Assembly (NCBI GenBank): GCA_013239625.1
Contig: MU055753.1
Span: 3,768,153 to 3,832,152 of the forward strand
Origin: Lama guanicoe
Taxonomy: Eukaryota
DNA length: 64,000 nt
Direction: 5' to 3'
A program made the translations under genes and the position numbers. The notes under the pieces were generated by a model. That model had not been told where the DNA came from. It saw only the letters and a program-made list of their open reading frames with translations, and searched no databases. This document shows, one piece after another, positions 43,172 through 51,584 of the stretch. The first letter of the stretch is position 1; each line of letters starts with the position of its first letter.

Positions 43172-44768
43172 ATGGCACCTGGGTTGCGACCACTTCTGCT
43201 GCTCGCGTTCTGGATGCTGGCGTCTTCCGCCCGTAGTCCCGCGGAGGCGAACGACGGAGGATGGTGAGCGGCGCTGGGCGGCCGGATAGAGCGGGGCGCG
43301 AGGCGGGACGGCCCGGGGCATTCACCGGTTGTGTCCGCAGGCCGCGGTATGGGCCGGGGGCACCGGTGGCCGTGGCGGAGGAGGAACGCTGCACGGTGGA
43401 GCGCCGAGTGGACCTCAGCTACGCCGAGTTCATGCAGCAGTATGTGCATCCTCCTGTGTGGCCACACCCAAGCCCGAAAACCATCCTTGGGGTTCCGTCA
43501 CCCTACACCGCTGAGGCCGTGCACTGGTCTGCTGGCCCGTAACCCCGTAACTCCCTAGGCTGCCTCTCCCAGAACTCATGCGAGCGCGCGTGGGCGGGAC
43601 GGTGGTAGGCGTGGACTAGCCCTGGCGGTGACCCTGCCCTTCTTTCTAGCTACGCCTTCTCCAGACCTGTCATTCTGCAAGGGCTCACAGACAACTCGGT
43701 GAGTGCTCACGCCTCTCTCGGCCACCTTTCGCCCTTGCTAGACCTGACCCCTAAGTCCTCTCCCTACTCCTGCAGAGGTTCCGGGTCCTGTGCTCCCGTG
43801 AAAGGCTACTGGCCTCTTTTGGGGACAGCGTGGTCCGGTTGAGTACTGCCAACACCTACTCCTACCGGAAAGGTGAGCTGCCCTACCCTGCAACCCAGCA
43901 TCGTGCTACCAGCACAAACCAGTCATGACCATCCCTTTTCACACTGCAGTGGATCTGCCCTTTCAGGAGTATGTGGAGCAGATGCTGCACCCTCAGGATC
44001 CCCTCTCCATGGGCAATGGTGAGCCAGATTAGGGTAGCATGGGATGATTTAGGATTGCCTAGGTGCCGAGATCCCTGCATTCTCCCATGTTCTCTCTGAC
44101 AGACACCCTGTACTTTTTCGGGGACAACAACTTCACTGAATGGGCATCACTCTTTCGGCACTACTCTCCACCTCCATTTGGTCTGCTAGGTACCACTCCT
44201 GCTTATAGCTTTGGAATTGCAGGTGAGTGTGCCTTTCAGGACCAGGAGACTTGGGGACTGGGCAGCCAGAGAGAAGGGGGAGAGGATTAAGCTTGGTAAC
44301 CAATTGTTCATAAATAACCCACAGGAGCCGGCTCTGGGGTGCCCTTCCACTGGCATGGTCCCGGGTTCTCGGAGGTGATCTACGGCCGCAAGGTCAGCAC
44401 AGGGTGGTGGCTGAGACTTTGGATTCACTGACCACAACACACAGAATAACCTTGCTGCTCCCATTCTCAGCGCTGGTTCCTGTACCCCCCTGAGAAGACA
44501 CCAGAGTTCCACCCCAACAAGACCACGCTGGCCTGGCTCCAGGACACATACCCGGCCTTGGCACCATCTGCACGGCCCCTGGAATGCACCATCCAGGCTG
44601 GTGAGGTCAGTGGCTGGCAGGCTGGAGCCAGGGTGGGCGCAACCAAGGGCCCCCAGCCAATCCCTGTGCCCTCCCATCCTCCACCAGGTGCTGTACTTCC
44701 CTGACCGGTGGTGGCATGCCACACTCAACCTCGACACCAGTGTCTTCATCTCTACCTTCCTCAGTTAG
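43172..44768 (+). CDS. JMJD8: JMJD8 JmjC-domain protein with signal peptide, 9 exons, about 269 aa (an in-frame upstream ATG exists at 43151)
   Basis: Exons 43172-43263, 43341-43439, 43650-43698, 43776-43872, 43950-44018, 44103-44222, 44325-44392, 44471-44605, 44688-44768 total 810 nt. Motifs GSGVPFHWHGPG, GRKRWFLYPP, GEVLYFPDRWWHATLNL. Confidence 0.95.
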
Positions 44769-45071: not shown

Positions 45072-47007
<1,936 letters not shown>

Positions 47008-47163
47008 NNNNNNNNNNNNNNNNNNNNNNNNNNNNNNNNNNNNNNNNNNNNNNNNNNNNNNNNNNNNNNNNNNNNNNNNNNNNNNNNNNNNNNNNNNNNN
47101 NNNNNNNNNNNNNNNNNNNNNNNNNNNNNNNNNNNNNNNNNNNNNNNNNNNNNNNNNNNNNNN

Positions 47164-47442
47164 GGCCCGCCCTGCGCCCGCAGCCCGAGCCCGCGATCCG
47201 CTCGGGCCCGGCCCAGCACTCAGCCACCGGAACTTCCGGTCGCGCGGGTGGGCGGGGACAGAGGGGTGGGCGGGGCCGCGCGTGCACCCGAAGCACGTCG
47301 GAGGCGGGGCAGGCAGGGAGTACGCACTCAAAACAACACCACGCGCGGCATCTAAATCTGAGAAGCCCGGAGTTGGTCCTGACTGAATCCCGCCCGGGCG
47401 CTCCAACGCCGCACCTCCGAGGCCCCGCCTCGGCGCGTAGAC
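47164..47442. promoter_or_regulatory. Bidirectional CpG-island promoter between STUB1 (-) and the unnamed HhH gene (+)
   Basis: CpG-rich, with a palindromic ETS pair CCGGAACTTCCGG near 47227 and several GGGCGGGG boxes. The two genes diverge from it within a few hundred bp. Confidence 0.75.
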
Positions 47443-48611
47443 ATGGCGGAGTCCTGTGGGCTTTGGGACTGTGAGGACCCGAGCCGCTGGGCCGCTGTCC
47501 TGAAGCGCCACCCGGAGGTGCTGCGGACGCGCGCGGGCCCTCGGGGACGGTTGGAAGCCCTGGACAGATGGTAGGGCTGTGGAAGGATCGGGCGGGCGGG
47601 AGACTTTCTTTGTCCGGACTCCCCGTCACCGCCCTTCCCCAGGTATCGAGAGGAGTTGCCTGCGGCCATCAAGGGCCGAGTAGAGAAGCACGTGACACGA
47701 GATGACCTGGAGCAGTTGCTGGCGTGGAAACTGGCAGTGAGGCGCTTCCCACGTGGGGGGTGGAGTCTCCTCCAGGGGCGGGGCACAGCCTCGTGGGCGT
47801 GACTTCCTTCTGGGCGGGCCCTCCTCCTTGAGGTGGACCCTCGCGGCGTGGGCGTGGCTTCCTCCTGGGAGCCGAGACCCCGACGAGGTCTACCAACCCT
47901 GAACCCTGACACGACCTGGCCACAGAGGGGCCTTTTCCGGCCGCGCCTGCAGCAACTCGTGACCGTCAACTCCCCGGAGCTGGTGGTGCAGCGTTCGGCC
48001 GCCGCTTTCCGCCTCCTGCCAGACATGCATGCAGCGGTCATGGAATTGTGCGCTCTCCAGGGTGTGGGCCCCACTACTGCCTCGGGTTAGTCGGGAGACC
48101 TGGGCACGCCGGCGGGGTTTAGGGCGGGACCTGGCCTATTAGCGTCCTTATCTGTGAAGTTGCCTAACGGCTACGCACATGACACCACACCGAGATCATT
48201 GGTAAGGGTGGCCCCAGGCTGAGTCTGTCCTGGGACTGATGGGGCCTGAATGCTGGCCCTTCACTGCCCGCAGCGATCCTGGCTGCTGGAGCTCCCGAGG
48301 TGGCCGCTTTCATGTCTGAGGAGGCAGTGGCCGCAGTGCCTGGCTTGCCAGCCCTGCAGTACACTCTCAAGCACTATCTGCTGTACTTGGGCAGGGTGCA
48401 AGAGCGTGCCACAGCCCTGAGCCGAGGTGAGGAGACTGACGATGGTGGCCAGGGAGGGCATCCAGGACCCTGGTCAGGGTAGAGTGTGCACAGCTATCCA
48501 GCAGGGTAGGGTGGCCAGGGCCCCAGAGACCCAGACTCCCTCCGCTCCTCCCTAGGCAGGGCCTCAGGGCTGTGGACCCCTCACCACGTGGAGACAGCAC
48601 TGTGGACATAG
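47443..48611 (+). CDS. Unnamed helix-hairpin-helix, DNA-glycosylase-like protein (Amun/zgc:112496-like); 196 aa to the in-frame TAG, 232 aa if read to the TAA at 48719
   Basis: Strong Kozak gacATGG. Exons 47443-47570, 47643-47736, 47926-48085, 48274-48426, 48556 onward, all GT-AG with compatible phases. Peptide includes LEALDRWYREELP, LLAWKLARGLFRPRLQQLV, ELCALQGVGPTTASAIL, FMSEEA, LQYTLKHY, WTPHHVETALW. AATAAA at 48824-48829. Confidence 0.85.
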
Positions 48612-49352
48612 GCTATGGGGCAGAAGCTGTGCCCTGATCTACTGCCTGATCTCAGTCCCAGCCCAGCCACCCCCGACAACACCAGGCCAGCCAAGAAGCG
48701 CAGGACCCAGGCGGACTAACTTGGCTGTGGCCCAGAACCTGCTCACCTGCCATATGACCTTAGGCTGCAAGTGTCTCTGGACAGCAGGCTGGCAGAGCAG
48801 GAGGCTGGCTGCTGCAGAAGCTCAATAAATGCTTATTGTACTCACATGTGATCCTGAGGCCCACAACTCTCCCCAGGGGCTCCCACCTCCCACACAGAGG
48901 TACCTCCTGCCAGATGCAGAGGATCAAGGTGGGGGAGCCCATGCTGCCCACATGGAGGGAAGGGCCCTCACAATTTGTTTAGCCAGTGGGGAGAGCCCAG
49001 ATCAGCCCCCAAAGTACCAGTACAGGTCCCTGATGCTGTGTAAAATATTTATTCATTCTCCAAAAAGGCTCAGACTGCAACTCTTGGAGGAGAGGCTGGG
49101 CACAGTCTCCTCTGGGGCCACCCTTGGGGACCCCCAACACACAGCCCAGTCCAGCAGTCCTTCCCCCCAGGCCTGGGAGGGGGCAGCCAGGGCTGATGTA
49201 AGGCTTGGCCTGGACTTGGCCACTGGGGCCACCTGACCCCGCGGGGAAGAAGTAGCCTCCAGACGTACATTCACAGAGGGTGGACATGCAGACCTGCCTG
49301 GTGGCTGGCCCACAGATGCTGCACCCTGGCTATTGTGGCCCTGGGGATCCTG

Positions 49353-51584
49353 TCAGGGTGGCGGGGGGACATGGGCACCCAGCAGGTCATAGGCGAAGAC
49401 GTTCCAGAAGATGGCGAAGAGCAGGAACGTGCCATAGGCAAGCAGCACCACCCACCAGCCACACTGGTCCCGCAGGCGCTCCTCGTAGCTGCGCAGGATG
49501 GTCAGGCCCATGCTGACACCCACCACTGCACCCGCTAGGTGTGCCATGAAGCTCGGTTGCGGGCCAGAGGCAGGCAGTGGCGGGGAGAAGCGCAGCCACA
49601 CAGCCCGGCCCACCTCGGAGCTCACTGCAGAGGGAGGCAGCAGGTGAGAGATGCCCTAGCAGTAGGCTGAGGCCCACCCCCCGGGCCCTCTACTTACTGC
49701 ACACCAGGGCCAGCACCATCCTTAGCAGCTTGTAGGGACACCTCATCCCAGCCCAGTTCTGAGAGAGCGTGAATAAGAAAAGCTGCGAGGCAGGCCTTGT
49801 GGACCCCTCCCCGCCCGCCGCTGGGGCTGCCCCATTACCATGACGACATTGGCCAGGTGTGCGGAGCACAGGGCGTAGACCCCGCCGGAGCCCCCCACCA
49901 CAGGGGCCCGCATGTCAGTAATGGAGACGGTCAAGGAACCTGTATGAGCAAGGGGAGAGCTGTGAGGTGAGGCCTGCCAGTGAGGTGCCCAGGGTGCATG
50001 TGCCTGCCTCACCTGCCAGCACACCCGCCAGGTAGAGAAGGCTGATACGGAGCAGGCCGTGTACCATCTCCAGGGGCACCCCGATCATCAGCTGCAGGAG
50101 CGCATTGAACCCCAGCTGCTCTAGCCTGGTTGTGTGGGGGCAAACAGGTACGAAGGGTGAAGTCCCCCTGCCCCCACCTCAAGGGGCCAAGCCCTCCTGA
50201 TTCAATCTGAGGGGTGCCGGGGTGGGAAGCCCACTCACCCAACATGCATGAACATGTAGGTGACGAAGCGCCAGGCTCGAGCACGGTGGCCGGGGTGGTA
50301 CACAAGGGGGCTCTTCATGTACTCGGGGTGGTAGGTCTGCAGCACCCACTTGTTGAAACGGGCCCCGTAGCACAGGAACACAATGATCTGGAGGGCGACA
50401 AGCATTAAGGCCAGGCAGGGCCAGGGATGCTGGATGGAGGCTCCCCAGGGCAGGGTGGGGGCGGTGGGCAAGCAGGCCCACCTGAGCTAGGGTGACCGAG
50501 GCCATAAACACTGGGGGTGGGCAGCTGCGGTGCCGGTAGAAGTACCAGTGGCGGTCCACCTCTCGGGGCAGGATCTCGTAGGCCACGTAGCGGACAAACC
50601 GCTTGTAGACACCCAGGCCCGGCTCGTCCAGCAGCCCATCCCGGGGCAGTGCCCGCTGTCCGTTGGCGATGGCCCGCTTGAAGCTGCTTGAGCGCTTGCT
50701 GCTGATCTGGGGGGGTGGGGCCTAGGCATATAGGCCACCATATTCCCCCCATGGCTGCCCTGCCTAAGTGGTCCACCCCTTTCCTCACAGGGTCTGAGGC
50801 CCTGCCCCACGTCTACAGCCCTCCCAAGTGGGAAGGGCAGGGAGGAGGGGCCGCCTGCCCATCCCACTCCAGCCAGGGCACTGTGCCTGCTAAGGCCTGG
50901 GCCCCCAACCCAGCTGCCCAGCCCCCGTGCACTGACCAGGTCCACCAGCTCCTGGTAGCAGACCTGGCCCCGCTCGTTGCTCTGGGCCAGAGCCACCAGC
51001 ATGTCCAGCTTGGCAGGGTCCAGGGGCAGCTCATGGCTATGCACCAGGCCAGTGAAGGTGTCCGCACCGATGAAGCCTGTATTTTCAGGGTCCAGCTGCT
51101 GGGGTTGGGGCAGGGTGGGGGCAGTGGCCAAGGCCTGAGGGTGGGCCCAGCCCCTAGACCACAGGGCTGGACCAGGTCAGCTGGGAGAGGCAGGTTCCAA
51201 GCACCTTCAGTCCAAGCCCCTGTGCCCACATGGTCACAGAAGCTCTGGACACTGGTGCCTGGGACCCAGGCCTCCAGCTTCTCCAGCTGTCTCCCCACCT
51301 CATTTCTGCCCTGCCCATCTTGGAAGGGTAGGGCCAAGGTCTGAGGACAACCACCCTCCCTCCCGCCCTTCACCCATCGCCGTGGTCTGGCTCGCCCTTT
51401 TCTGGGGTCTCAGGCAAGGGACCAAGGTCGTGCAGGGAGAAGACTGAGCTGAGGGTCTCTGGGAGTTCCGTACCCCACAGCCCACCCAAGGGCGGAAGGC
51501 CAAGTCGGGGGCGGTGCCGGCGCCCCACCCCCACCCCCCACGCACCTGTTCCTGGATAAGCTGCAGCAGCGAGCTCCTATCCAT
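49353..51584 (-). CDS. RHBDL1: RHBDL1 rhomboid intramembrane serine protease, 8 exons, 373 aa
   Basis: Exons 51584-51546, 51098-50937, 50706-50482, 50387-50239, 50125-50013, 49939-49839, 49758-49698, 49624-49353 total 1122 nt. WR motif [11 protein letters not shown], catalytic GGSGG, FMAHLAG. Minus-strand AATAAA at 49048-49053. Confidence 0.96.

What the first reader, a model, noticed from the sequence alone, without database searches (positions are those of the whole stretch)
47443..48829. Hidden five-exon gene head-to-head with STUB1 encoding an HhH DNA-glycosylase-like (Amun/zgc:112496-type) protein
Seen in sequence: a strong-Kozak ATG at 47443, four GT-AG introns whose phases match (exons of 128+94+160+153 nt, then exon 5 from 48556), and AATAAA at 48824. 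The spliced product is MAESCGLWDCEDPSRWAAVLKRHPEVLRTRAGPRGRLEALDRWYREELPAAIKGRVEKHVTRDDLEQLLAWKLARGLFRPRLQQLVTVNSPELVVQRSAAAFRLLPDMHAAVMELCALQGVGPTTASAILAAGAPEVAAFMSEEAVAAVPGLPALQYTLKHYLLYLGRVQERATALSRGRASGLWTPHHVETALWT. The ORF track shows only fragments of it. Established knowledge: LxxLxGVGxxTA is the helix-hairpin-helix motif of EndoIII/MutY/AlkA/OGG1-type glycosylases. From memory, the WY..ELP, WKL.RG.FRP.L and WTP..VE.ALW blocks match the poorly characterised family of Drosophila Amun and zebrafish zgc:112496, and the human position between STUB1 and RHBDL1 is annotated only as a divergent non-coding transcript (STUB1-DT). Inference: this is an ancient, uncharacterised nuclear DNA-binding or repair-like gene that shares a promoter with the CHIP ligase, is kept in some mammals, and is probably lost in human.
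Basis: partly seen in the sequence, partly recalled or inferred. Interest (0 to 1): 0.92.

Follow-up and report, generated by a model that had tools for sequence, protein, structure and literature searches.

The report
Amun-type HhH gene, cut short
This is a real five-exon gene next to STUB1, the camelid copy of the fly Amun / fish zgc:112496 family with a DNA-glycosylase-like fold. It is already annotated in alpaca, and here a stop codon replaces a conserved tryptophan and cuts off the last 36 residues.

Summary
**Observation: confirmed.** The ATG at 47443, four GT..AG introns with matching phases, the stop at 48609-11 and AATAAA at 48824-29 are all in the sequence.

**Identity.**
- The six coding pieces line up in order with 232-aa orthologues, with no frameshift.
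- The protein belongs to the animal Amun / zgc:112496 family: 40% identity to Drosophila Amun, E 2e-37.
- A confident AlphaFold model of the cattle orthologue matches HhH-GPD DNA glycosylases. The best match is Thermotoga Ogg (Z 10.3), and the next 19 are all of that superfamily.

**What this finding did not say.** A sibling first-stage note (s1-859275) did flag it.
- The "natural" stop is a TGG>TAG nonsense codon at codon 197 of 232. It removes half of the last helix and the KKRR tail.
- The 35 codons behind it are still open and 31/35 identical to hippo.
- Camels keep the Trp but carry a 2-nt deletion and a lost splice donor in exon 1.
- In camel RNA, introns 1-3 are retained and exon 4 is often skipped.

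**Reading.** The gene looks dispensable in camelids and is probably being lost. Substitution counts cannot prove this (about 10 non-synonymous to 6 synonymous).

**Limits.** No RNA from the window's own species could be laid. No glycosylase activity is known for the family.

The parts
47164..47442 (.). CpG-island region between STUB1 exon 1 (minus strand, partly N-masked at 47029-47163) and the ATG; probable bidirectional promoter and 5' UTR
   Evidence: GC 0.73, CpG o/e 1.01. A camel RNA contig starts at 47300. STUB1 exon 1 peptide [16 protein letters not shown] lies on the minus strand just upstream.
47443..47570 (+). Exon 1 (codons 1-42 plus 2 nt), start codon in gacATGG
   Evidence: Aligns to residues 1-42 of hippo (34/42), cattle and zebra. 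Identical to alpaca RefSeq isoforms.
47643..47736 (+). Exon 2 (codons 43-74), WYREELP ... AWKLA
   Evidence: Aligns to residues 44-74 of the orthologues.
47926..48085 (+). Exon 3 (codons 75-128), RGLFRPRL ... helix-hairpin-helix LQGVGPTTAS
   Evidence: Pfam HHH E 0.0045, below cut-off. 148 homologues found. Aligns to residues 75-127.
48274..48426 (+). Exon 4 (codons 128-179): Gly/Pro loop and FMSEEA, where Glu replaces the family's conserved Asp. Its 153 nt make skipping frame-preserving.
   Evidence: E4>E5 junction seen in camel run X6. E3>E5 skipping junction seen in X1, X2 and X6.
48556..48611 (+). Exon 5 coding part (codons 179-196) ending in TAG
   Evidence: Acceptor 48556 is used in camel RNA contigs of three studies.
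48609..48611 (+). In-frame TAG at codon 197, where orthologues have Trp (LWTW); camel reads show G at 48610 (TGG)
   Evidence: Alpaca RefSeq X3 also ends at ...ALWT.
48612..48719 (+). 35 still-open codons behind the TAG (AMGQKLCPDLL ... PAKKRRTQAD, then TAA): the family's C-terminal helix end and basic NLS-like tail, no longer translated
   Evidence: 31/35 identical to hippo residues 198-232.
48656..48828 (+). Alternative last exon used by alpaca RefSeq isoforms X1, X2 and X4 (acceptor AG at 48654-5), read in another frame (VPAQPPPTT ... AAAEAQ); it is not like the C-terminal tail of any orthologue aligned here
   Evidence: Protein tails of P0001, P0172 and P0267 match this frame. No such junction appears in camel contigs.
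48824..48829 (+). AATAAA polyadenylation signal
   Evidence: The camel contig in X6 ends at 48832, and depth falls to 0 after 48863.

Best explanation
The locus is the camelid orthologue of the animal Amun / zgc:112496 gene. It is a five-exon gene transcribed divergently from the STUB1 CpG-island promoter and ends tail-to-tail with RHBDL1. Intact orthologues encode a ~232-aa all-helical protein with the HhH-GPD (EndoIII/MutY/OGG-type DNA glycosylase) fold. They have a helix-hairpin-helix, a Gly/Pro loop, an acidic residue about 19 positions after the hairpin, and a basic C-terminal tail. The family has no Lys at the position used by bifunctional glycosylase/lyases. It most likely acts as a nuclear DNA-binding protein, or at most as a monofunctional base-flipping enzyme; this step is inferred, not shown. 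In this genome the gene carries a TGG>TAG nonsense mutation at codon 197 in the last exon, so nonsense-mediated decay is not expected. The product would be a 196-aa protein lacking half of the terminal helix and the KKRR tail. Old World camels keep that Trp but have broken exon 1 (2-nt deletion, donor GT>AT), and their transcripts retain introns or skip exon 4. Two different disabling lesions in sister lineages make it probable that the gene is dispensable in camelids and is being lost. The damage is recent, because the rest of the coding sequence is still well preserved.
For: Gene model and colinearity. Family: 148 homologues of exon 3; orthologues named zgc:112496, 'STUB1-DT' (Erinaceus) and 'HhH-GPD domain-containing protein'; Amun names; alpaca X3 vs Drosophila takahashii Amun 40% identity over 191 aa, E 2e-37; hhalign 100%, E 4.6e-56. 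Fold: AF2 model of the cattle orthologue, pLDDT 89.4, pTM 0.84. VIA-align gives Z 10.3 (168 aligned residues) to Tm1821 Ogg, and ranks 2-20 are all HhH-GPD-fold proteins: MutY, EndoIII, OGG1, Mag1, MagIII, NTHL1, AlkA, AGOG and the queuine-salvage enzyme DUF2419. Foldseek's top hits are OGGs at prob 0.87-0.96. Pfam HHH hits 41 of 46 members. Nonsense codon: the frame stays open behind the TAG; Trp in camel, cattle, hippo, horse, bat, manatee, turtle and fish; the last helix spans 187-203 in the model. Camel lesions: 2-nt deletion at 47470, G>A at 47571, A>G at 48610. The Camelus ferus model P0268 starts 'MIGLWK' where the window reads 'MVGLWK', which confirms the G>A independently. None of the three camel models contains exon 1. 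Camels also have Leu at the otherwise invariant Ser of GPATAS.
Against: The rest of the gene shows little decay. There is no excess branch length on the camelid lineage: 0.10 against 0.06-0.15 for other ungulates. Only 2 deviations occur at ~50 columns that are >=90% conserved, within the vertebrate range of 0-3. The window-to-camel comparison gives about 10 non-synonymous to 6 synonymous changes (omega ~0.6). That fits omega 1 (P 0.22) and is only weakly against 0.3 (P 0.14). A 196-aa product could still fold and reach the nucleus by diffusion. RefSeq annotates the locus as protein-coding. No RNA from the window's own species was laid: X24 gave 0 reads. The E1/E2, E2/E3 and E3/E4 junctions were not seen in the relative's contigs. 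No enzymatic or DNA-binding activity has been shown for any family member in anything read here.
Confidence: 0.72

Rival explanations
1. The gene is still functional in this species. The TAG defines a tolerated, slightly shorter protein (196 aa) that keeps the whole HhH-GPD core, and the missing tail is dispensable because a 22-kDa protein enters the nucleus passively.
For: All splice sites and frames are intact. The conserved core columns are preserved. There is no rate acceleration. Omega of about 0.6 is below 1. A stop in the last exon escapes nonsense-mediated decay (established knowledge). RefSeq models it as coding.
Against: The TAG cuts the last model helix (187-203) in the middle and removes a Trp kept in all vertebrate orthologues aligned, plus the conserved KKRK-type tail. 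The HhH hairpin has Thr at a nearly invariant Ala. Two basic positions (RG-K/R-F and L-K/R-GVGP) are Leu and Gln in all camelids. The sister lineage has clearly broken its copy.
Confidence: 0.22
2. The TAG is a polymorphism or an assembly or base-call error, and the species normally has an intact 232-codon gene.
For: It is a single-base difference from TGG. The downstream frame is perfectly preserved.
Against: A second, non-identical sequence, the alpaca RefSeq protein X3, differs from the window product by Ser/Gly at residue 120 and stops at the same place. The other three alpaca isoforms dodge the region by an alternative acceptor.
Confidence: 0.05
3. The locus is merely a non-coding divergent transcript of the STUB1 promoter, and the open frame is accidental.
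For: Camel contigs show intron retention and exon skipping. The human counterpart is named as a divergent transcript: NCBI uses that symbol for the hedgehog (Erinaceus) orthologue.
Against: Six colinear coding pieces are 80-100% identical to orthologues in other orders, and the homology reaches flies. An accidental frame cannot do this.
Confidence: 0.01

Closest known systems
Drosophila Amun (CG2446), a nuclear protein with a glycosylase-like domain, found as a Notch-pathway modifier (Shalaby et al. 2009, cited in PMC3656729 and bioRxiv 10.1101/2025.04.04.647281)
   Same: Homologous over the whole ~200-aa domain: 40% identity, E 2e-37; hhalign 100%. The signature blocks are shared: WYxxELP, WKxxRGKF, GVG..ASA, FMADE, YT, W.PH.VE.ALW.
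   Different: The fly proteins are 450-590 aa with a long low-complexity C-terminal extension. The vertebrate proteins are ~232-250 aa and end in a short basic tail. The window copy is truncated by a nonsense codon. No vertebrate function is known.
Vertebrate zgc:112496 / 'uncharacterized protein LOC...' orthologues, including Vicugna pacos XP_072798424-27 and Erinaceus 'STUB1-DT'
   Same: Same gene. Alpaca isoform X3 has the same exon structure and the same stop as the window model. Exons are colinear with the 232-aa cattle, hippo and horse proteins.
   Different: Intact orthologues read Trp at codon 197 and continue for 35 residues. The window and the alpaca reference stop there.
Ogg2-type 8-oxoguanine DNA glycosylase (Thermotoga maritima Tm1821, PDB 3n0u) and other HhH-GPD glycosylases
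   Same: Same two-lobed all-helical fold (Z 10.3, 168 residues, rmsd 4.2). It has an HhH hairpin followed by a Gly/Pro loop and an acidic residue at the start of the next helix.
   Different: Only 16% identity. There is no hit by sequence to any solved glycosylase and none to Pfam HhH-GPD. No Lys follows the GVG hairpin (Ala in the family, Thr here). The acidic residue is Glu in cetartiodactyls, including this window. Activity is untested.
Unitary pseudogenes / lineage-specific gene loss (for example the frame-broken ape copies of this same gene)
   Same: The sister lineages carry independent disabling lesions: TAG here; frameshift plus donor loss in camels. The frames are broken in Pongo and Pygathrix models.
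   Different: Here there is a single late nonsense codon, with all else intact, so the loss, if it is one, is very young.

Membership tests
Amun / zgc:112496 family | Significant full-length, colinear sequence similarity to named members | tested here: met
   Exon-by-exon colinearity with six orthologues. Exon 3 E 2.7e-18 to reindeer, and hits down to flies. Alpaca X3 vs Amun E 2e-37. hhalign 100%. Names.
Amun / zgc:112496 family | Conserved blocks WYxEELP, WKLxRGKFRPRL, GVGPATAS, FMADEA, QYTxKHY, WTPHxVExxLW (invariant W71, K72, G122, A126, S127, L130, F140, Y157, W195 in cattle numbering) | tested here: met
   All nine invariant residues are present in the window exons. Deviations occur at less strict positions: RGLFRP, LQGVGP, GPTTAS, FMSEEA.
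Amun / zgc:112496 family | C-terminal helix end (LWTWxVxxKL.P.LL) and basic KKRK-type tail in the translated product | tested here: not met
   These are encoded at 48612-48719 but lie behind the in-frame TAG at 48609-11.
Amun / zgc:112496 family | Spliced mRNA joining the five exons | tested here: inconclusive
   Data come only from a relative whose contigs carry the residues of the Camelus bactrianus model P0269. The E4>E5 junction appears in one run and E3>E5 in three. E1/E2, E2/E3 and E3/E4 were not seen, and introns 1-3 are colinear in the contigs. The own-species raw-read run gave 0 reads.
HhH-GPD DNA glycosylase superfamily | Helix-hairpin-helix motif | tested here: met
   Pfam HHH/HHH_5 hits 41 and 38 of 46 family members, best E 9e-9. 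Window exon 3 gives E 0.0045, below the gathering score.
HhH-GPD DNA glycosylase superfamily | Gly/Pro-rich loop followed by a conserved Asp about 18-20 residues after the hairpin | tested here: inconclusive
   The family has AAGAPxxAAFMAD, with P135 and D143 >=90% conserved and D143 at the start of helix 143-147. The spacing matches EndoIII, MutY and OGG1 as I recall them. No residue-level superposition was available. The window and all cetartiodactyls have Glu instead.
HhH-GPD DNA glycosylase superfamily | Two-lobed all-alpha fold | tested here: met
   Tested on the cattle orthologue, not the window product. AF2 pLDDT 89.4. Z 10.3 to 3n0u, and ranks 2-20 are all of this fold at Z 5-7. Foldseek's top hits are OGGs, but at E 0.08-0.5.
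HhH-GPD DNA glycosylase superfamily | N-glycosylase activity on DNA | not testable with these tools
OGG-type bifunctional glycosylase/lyase | Catalytic Lys two residues after the GxG of the hairpin | tested here: not met
   That position is a nearly invariant Ala in the family (A124) and Thr in the window. The register is by motif, from my memory of OGG1 and EndoIII.

The most novel reading that the evidence does not exclude
The Amun / zgc:112496 family may be a genuine, still unassayed animal HhH-GPD enzyme: a monofunctional glycosylase or base-flipping reader that keeps the acidic residue but has no lyase Lys. It would sit beside STUB1 in mammals and would have been lost independently in apes and, by different lesions, in both camelid lineages. 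Natural knock-outs and a truncation allele would then be available for study.
Probability: 0.25. Interest if true: 0.6.

Novelty: already known. Interest (0 to 1): 0.3.

Why it matters
The gene and its family are already in public annotation, so nothing hidden has been uncovered. What remains of value is threefold.

1. There is now tool-based confirmation that a conserved animal protein with a DNA-glycosylase fold lies head-to-head with STUB1. It has no described vertebrate function.
2. New World camelids carry a late nonsense codon and Old World camels carry a broken exon 1. These are two independent lesions that mark the gene as dispensable in this family. Ape gene models are frame-broken too.
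3. The family keeps the acidic residue of the HhH-GPD signature but lacks the lyase lysine, which narrows the biochemical hypotheses to test.

Tried and rejected
**Weak or empty searches**
- Pfam exon by exon gave only a sub-threshold HHH hit for exon 3.
- Sequence searches against solved structures gave only ComEA and uS13 HhH hits, at E 0.2-1, with exon 3 and with the family profile.
- Pfam on 46 family members found no HhH-GPD (PF00730) hit. Only weak OGG-like (PF21790, 6 members) and DUF6308 (4 members) hits appeared, below cut-off.
- Foldseek against PDB gave no hit at E<=0.001, though its top ranks are all OGGs.

No orthologue DNA could be fetched, so no codon-model dN/dS and no synteny check in other species were possible.
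- Raw-read run X24 of the window's organism gave 0 reads, so there is no own-species RNA test.

**Tests of relaxed constraint that came out negative or undecided**
- Protein-tree branch lengths show no camelid acceleration.
- Deviations at conserved columns do not mark camelids as outliers.
- The count of 10 non-synonymous to 6 synonymous changes is undecided.

**Papers**
- Shalaby et al. 2009 (PMC2728848) is not held. Searches for Amun and STUB1-DT gave only passing mentions.

Exons were used one by one by reference. The tool-returned alpaca protein P0266 and the cattle orthologue P0149 stood in for the whole protein.
- The N run at 47029-47163 was left untouched.
- No human sequence or contig was fetched or compared.

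**Considered and set aside without a test**
- Stop-codon readthrough, or A-to-I editing of UAG to a Trp codon. Nothing here points to either.
Full report
**1. The observation**

- The ATG at 47443 sits in gacATGG.
- Exons are 47443-47570, 47643-47736, 47926-48085, 48274-48426 and 48556 onward.
- All four introns are GT..AG, and the phases (2, 0, 1, 1) keep one frame.
- TAG lies at 48609-11 and AATAAA at 48824-29.
- The product would have 196 residues.

This is not chance. Exon 3 alone (53 aa) finds 148 proteins at E<=1e-3 among 1.84 billion, nearly always at residues ~75-127 of ~230-250-aa proteins. That is where exon 3 should lie after 74 codons of exons 1-2.

Aligned one by one, the pieces map in order onto the 232-aa hippo, cattle and zebra proteins:

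| Piece | Orthologue residues |
|---|---|
| E1 | 1-42 |
| E2 | 44-74 |
| E3 | 75-127 |
| E4 | 129-178 |
| E5 | 180-196 |
| stretch behind the TAG | 198-232 |

The single missing residues are the split codons and the TAG itself.

**2. Surroundings**

- STUB1/CHIP lies on the minus strand. Its U-box and TPR peptides are at 45072-46466 and its exon 1 peptide ends near 47000, with part masked as N at 47029-47163.
- RHBDL1 lies on the minus strand at 49353-51584.
- The gene is therefore head-to-head with STUB1 and tail-to-tail with RHBDL1.
- The 279 bases between the N run and the ATG have GC 0.73 and CpG o/e 1.01. That fits a shared CpG-island promoter. The sharing is inferred from geometry, not shown.

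**3. What the gene is**

A search with the reindeer orthologue returned 332 relatives.
- They include 'uncharacterized protein LOC...' entries in cattle, hippo, horse, bats, pig, manatee, beaver, marsupials, monotremes, reptiles and amphibians.
- Many fishes carry 'zgc:112496'.
- One UniRef entry is called 'HhH-GPD domain-containing protein'.
- The Erinaceus protein is called 'STUB1-DT'.

The long insect hits of exon 3 belong to a group whose members are named Amun. Alpaca isoform X3 aligns with Drosophila takahashii Amun at 40% identity over 191 residues, E 2e-37. The profile comparison gives 100% probability.

The gene is not hidden. Vicugna pacos RefSeq has four isoforms, XP_072798424-27.
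- X1, X2 and X4 use an acceptor at 48654-5 and read the 3' region in another frame. That avoids the TAG, but the resulting tail is not like the C-terminal tail of any orthologue aligned here.

**4. The stop is a lesion**

The frame runs on behind the TAG for 35 codons (AMGQKLCPDLL...PAKKRRTQAD).
- Orthologues read Trp at that codon: ALWTWAVGQKLCPDLL...PAKKRRTQAD.
- The stretch behind the TAG is 31/35 identical to hippo.
- The stop is thus a TGG>TAG change at codon 197 of 232.
- It is shared by the window and by the non-identical alpaca reference, so a base-call error is unlikely.
- In the AF2 model of the cattle orthologue the last helix spans 187-203. The truncation removes its second half and the basic tail.
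- The TAG is in the last exon, so nonsense-mediated decay is not expected (established knowledge). A truncated protein may be made.

**5. The sister lineage**

The RNA runs that hold the stretch come from a relative 2-3% diverged. Its contigs carry the residues of the Camelus bactrianus model P0269 at all six positions where P0269 differs from the window and the contigs were listed (R>L, G>C, V>M, stop>W, N>D, A>V). I therefore take it to be a camel.

Camel has G at 48610, so its Trp is intact. It also has:
- a 2-nt deletion at 47470 in exon 1;
- G>A at 47571, which destroys the intron 1 donor.

The Camelus ferus model P0268 begins 'MIGLWK' where the window frame reads 'MVGLWK'. That confirms the G>A independently. 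None of the three camel gene models contains exon 1. Exon 1 encodes three and a half helices of the fold, at pLDDT about 95. Camels also have Leu at the invariant Ser of GPATAS.

The camel contigs show:
- the exon 3 to exon 5 junction (48085|48556; exon 4 skipped, in frame, minus 51 residues) in three studies;
- the exon 4 to exon 5 junction in one run;
- introns 1, 2 and 3 colinear with the genome, at the same depth as the exons, while the 3' part of intron 4 is nearly absent.

The locus is therefore transcribed and partly spliced, but mostly not into a full coding mRNA. No RNA of the window's own organism was obtained: X24 gave 0 reads.

**6. Is the window copy decaying?**

*For:*
- Two independent disabling lesions occur in sister lineages.
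- All camelids share Leu and Gln at two otherwise basic positions (RG-K/R-F and L-K/R-GVGP).
- The window has Thr at a nearly invariant Ala of the hairpin.

*Against:*
- The camelid branch is no longer than those of other ungulates.
- Deviations at >=90% conserved columns are 2 of ~50, within the vertebrate range.
- Window versus camel shows about 10 non-synonymous and 6 synonymous changes over 510 and 180 sites. Two of the ten were read from the camel proteins rather than from the contigs.
- That gives omega about 0.6, compatible with 1 (P 0.22) and not clearly excluding 0.3 (P 0.14).

My reading is that the lesions are young and the gene is dispensable in camelids. Loss is probable but not proven.

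**7. Fold and likely mechanism**

The family has no Pfam domain of its own beyond the HhH motif and no sequence match to solved glycosylases.

The AF2 model of the cattle orthologue is confident (pLDDT 89.4, pTM 0.84) and all-helical.
- VIA-align against 48,161 chains gives Tm1821 Ogg at Z 10.3 (168 residues).
- Ranks 2-20 are MutY, EndoIII, OGG1, Mag1, MagIII, NTHL1, AlkA, AGOG and the queuine-salvage enzyme of the same fold, at Z 5-7. The Fic proteins below them score 4.5 or less.
- The tool warns that Z below about 13 can be generic for helical proteins.
- The unbroken run of one superfamily, Foldseek's OGG-only top ranks and the HhH motif together make the HhH-GPD fold the well-supported reading.

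The family alignment shows GVGPATASAVLAAGAPxxAAFMADEA, with P135 and D143 at >=90% conservation and D143 at the start of a helix.
- By my memory of EndoIII, MutY and OGG1, this is the register of the catalytic Asp.
- The Lys of bifunctional enzymes would fall on the nearly invariant Ala.
- That register is a lead, not a test.
- Cetartiodactyls, including this window, have Glu for that Asp.

The most likely mechanism for intact members is therefore nuclear DNA binding through the HhH, possibly with monofunctional base excision. Fly Amun is described as a nuclear, glycosylase-domain regulator in Notch-dependent development. I have this second-hand, from bioRxiv 10.1101/2025.04.04.647281, which cites Shalaby et al. 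2009.

**8. Human loss**

This was not tested, and no human sequence was used.
- The orangutan model P0025 and the douc langur model P0196 are frame-broken around exons 1 and 3-4.
- NCBI gives the hedgehog orthologue the symbol of the human divergent transcript.

**9. Limits**

The alpaca and cattle proteins returned by the tools served instead.
- The N run was left alone.

**10. Verdict**

This is a real gene, correctly modelled and correctly assigned to its family. It is already annotated, and in this genome it is truncated. The scan's first stage had also noted the TAG separately (s1-859275). Interest is modest.

Noticed in passing
window 49019-49625 (minus strand): RHBDL1's last coding exon ends at 49353. 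A minus-strand AATAAA lies at 49053-49048. Camel RNA contigs of two runs end at 49019/49020. The two convergent genes therefore end about 170-200 bases apart.
   Followed up: partly
window 46292-46876 (plus strand, inside STUB1): The Camelus bactrianus model P0269 replaces the broken exon 1 with an N-terminus (MAGIKTLEFSGNQHW...). It resembles a plus-strand ORF here (..[15 protein letters not shown]..), which would be an upstream exon antisense to STUB1.
   Followed up: no
window 47029-47163: A run of N covers the part of STUB1 exon 1 where I would expect its start codon (not checked).
   Followed up: no
proteins P0025 (Pongo abelii) and P0196 (Pygathrix nigripes): Ape and colobine gene models of this locus are frame-broken. 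The exon 4 region is read in another frame and the HhH hairpin is lost in Pygathrix. This suggests pseudogenisation in catarrhines.
   Followed up: partly
alignment (cattle residue 143): All cetartiodactyl orthologues (cattle, deer, hippo, pig, camelids) have Glu where more than 90% of the family has the Asp of FMADEA, the putative catalytic position.
   Followed up: no
tree: The branch leading to placental mammals is long (0.37 changes per column) compared with those within placentals. The protein changed quickly at the base of placentals.
   Followed up: no
window 43261-43542 (plus strand): An ORF with ...RCTVERRVDLSYAEFMQQYV... lies beyond STUB1's 3' end. From memory it may be a JMJD8 exon. 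It was not checked.
   Followed up: no
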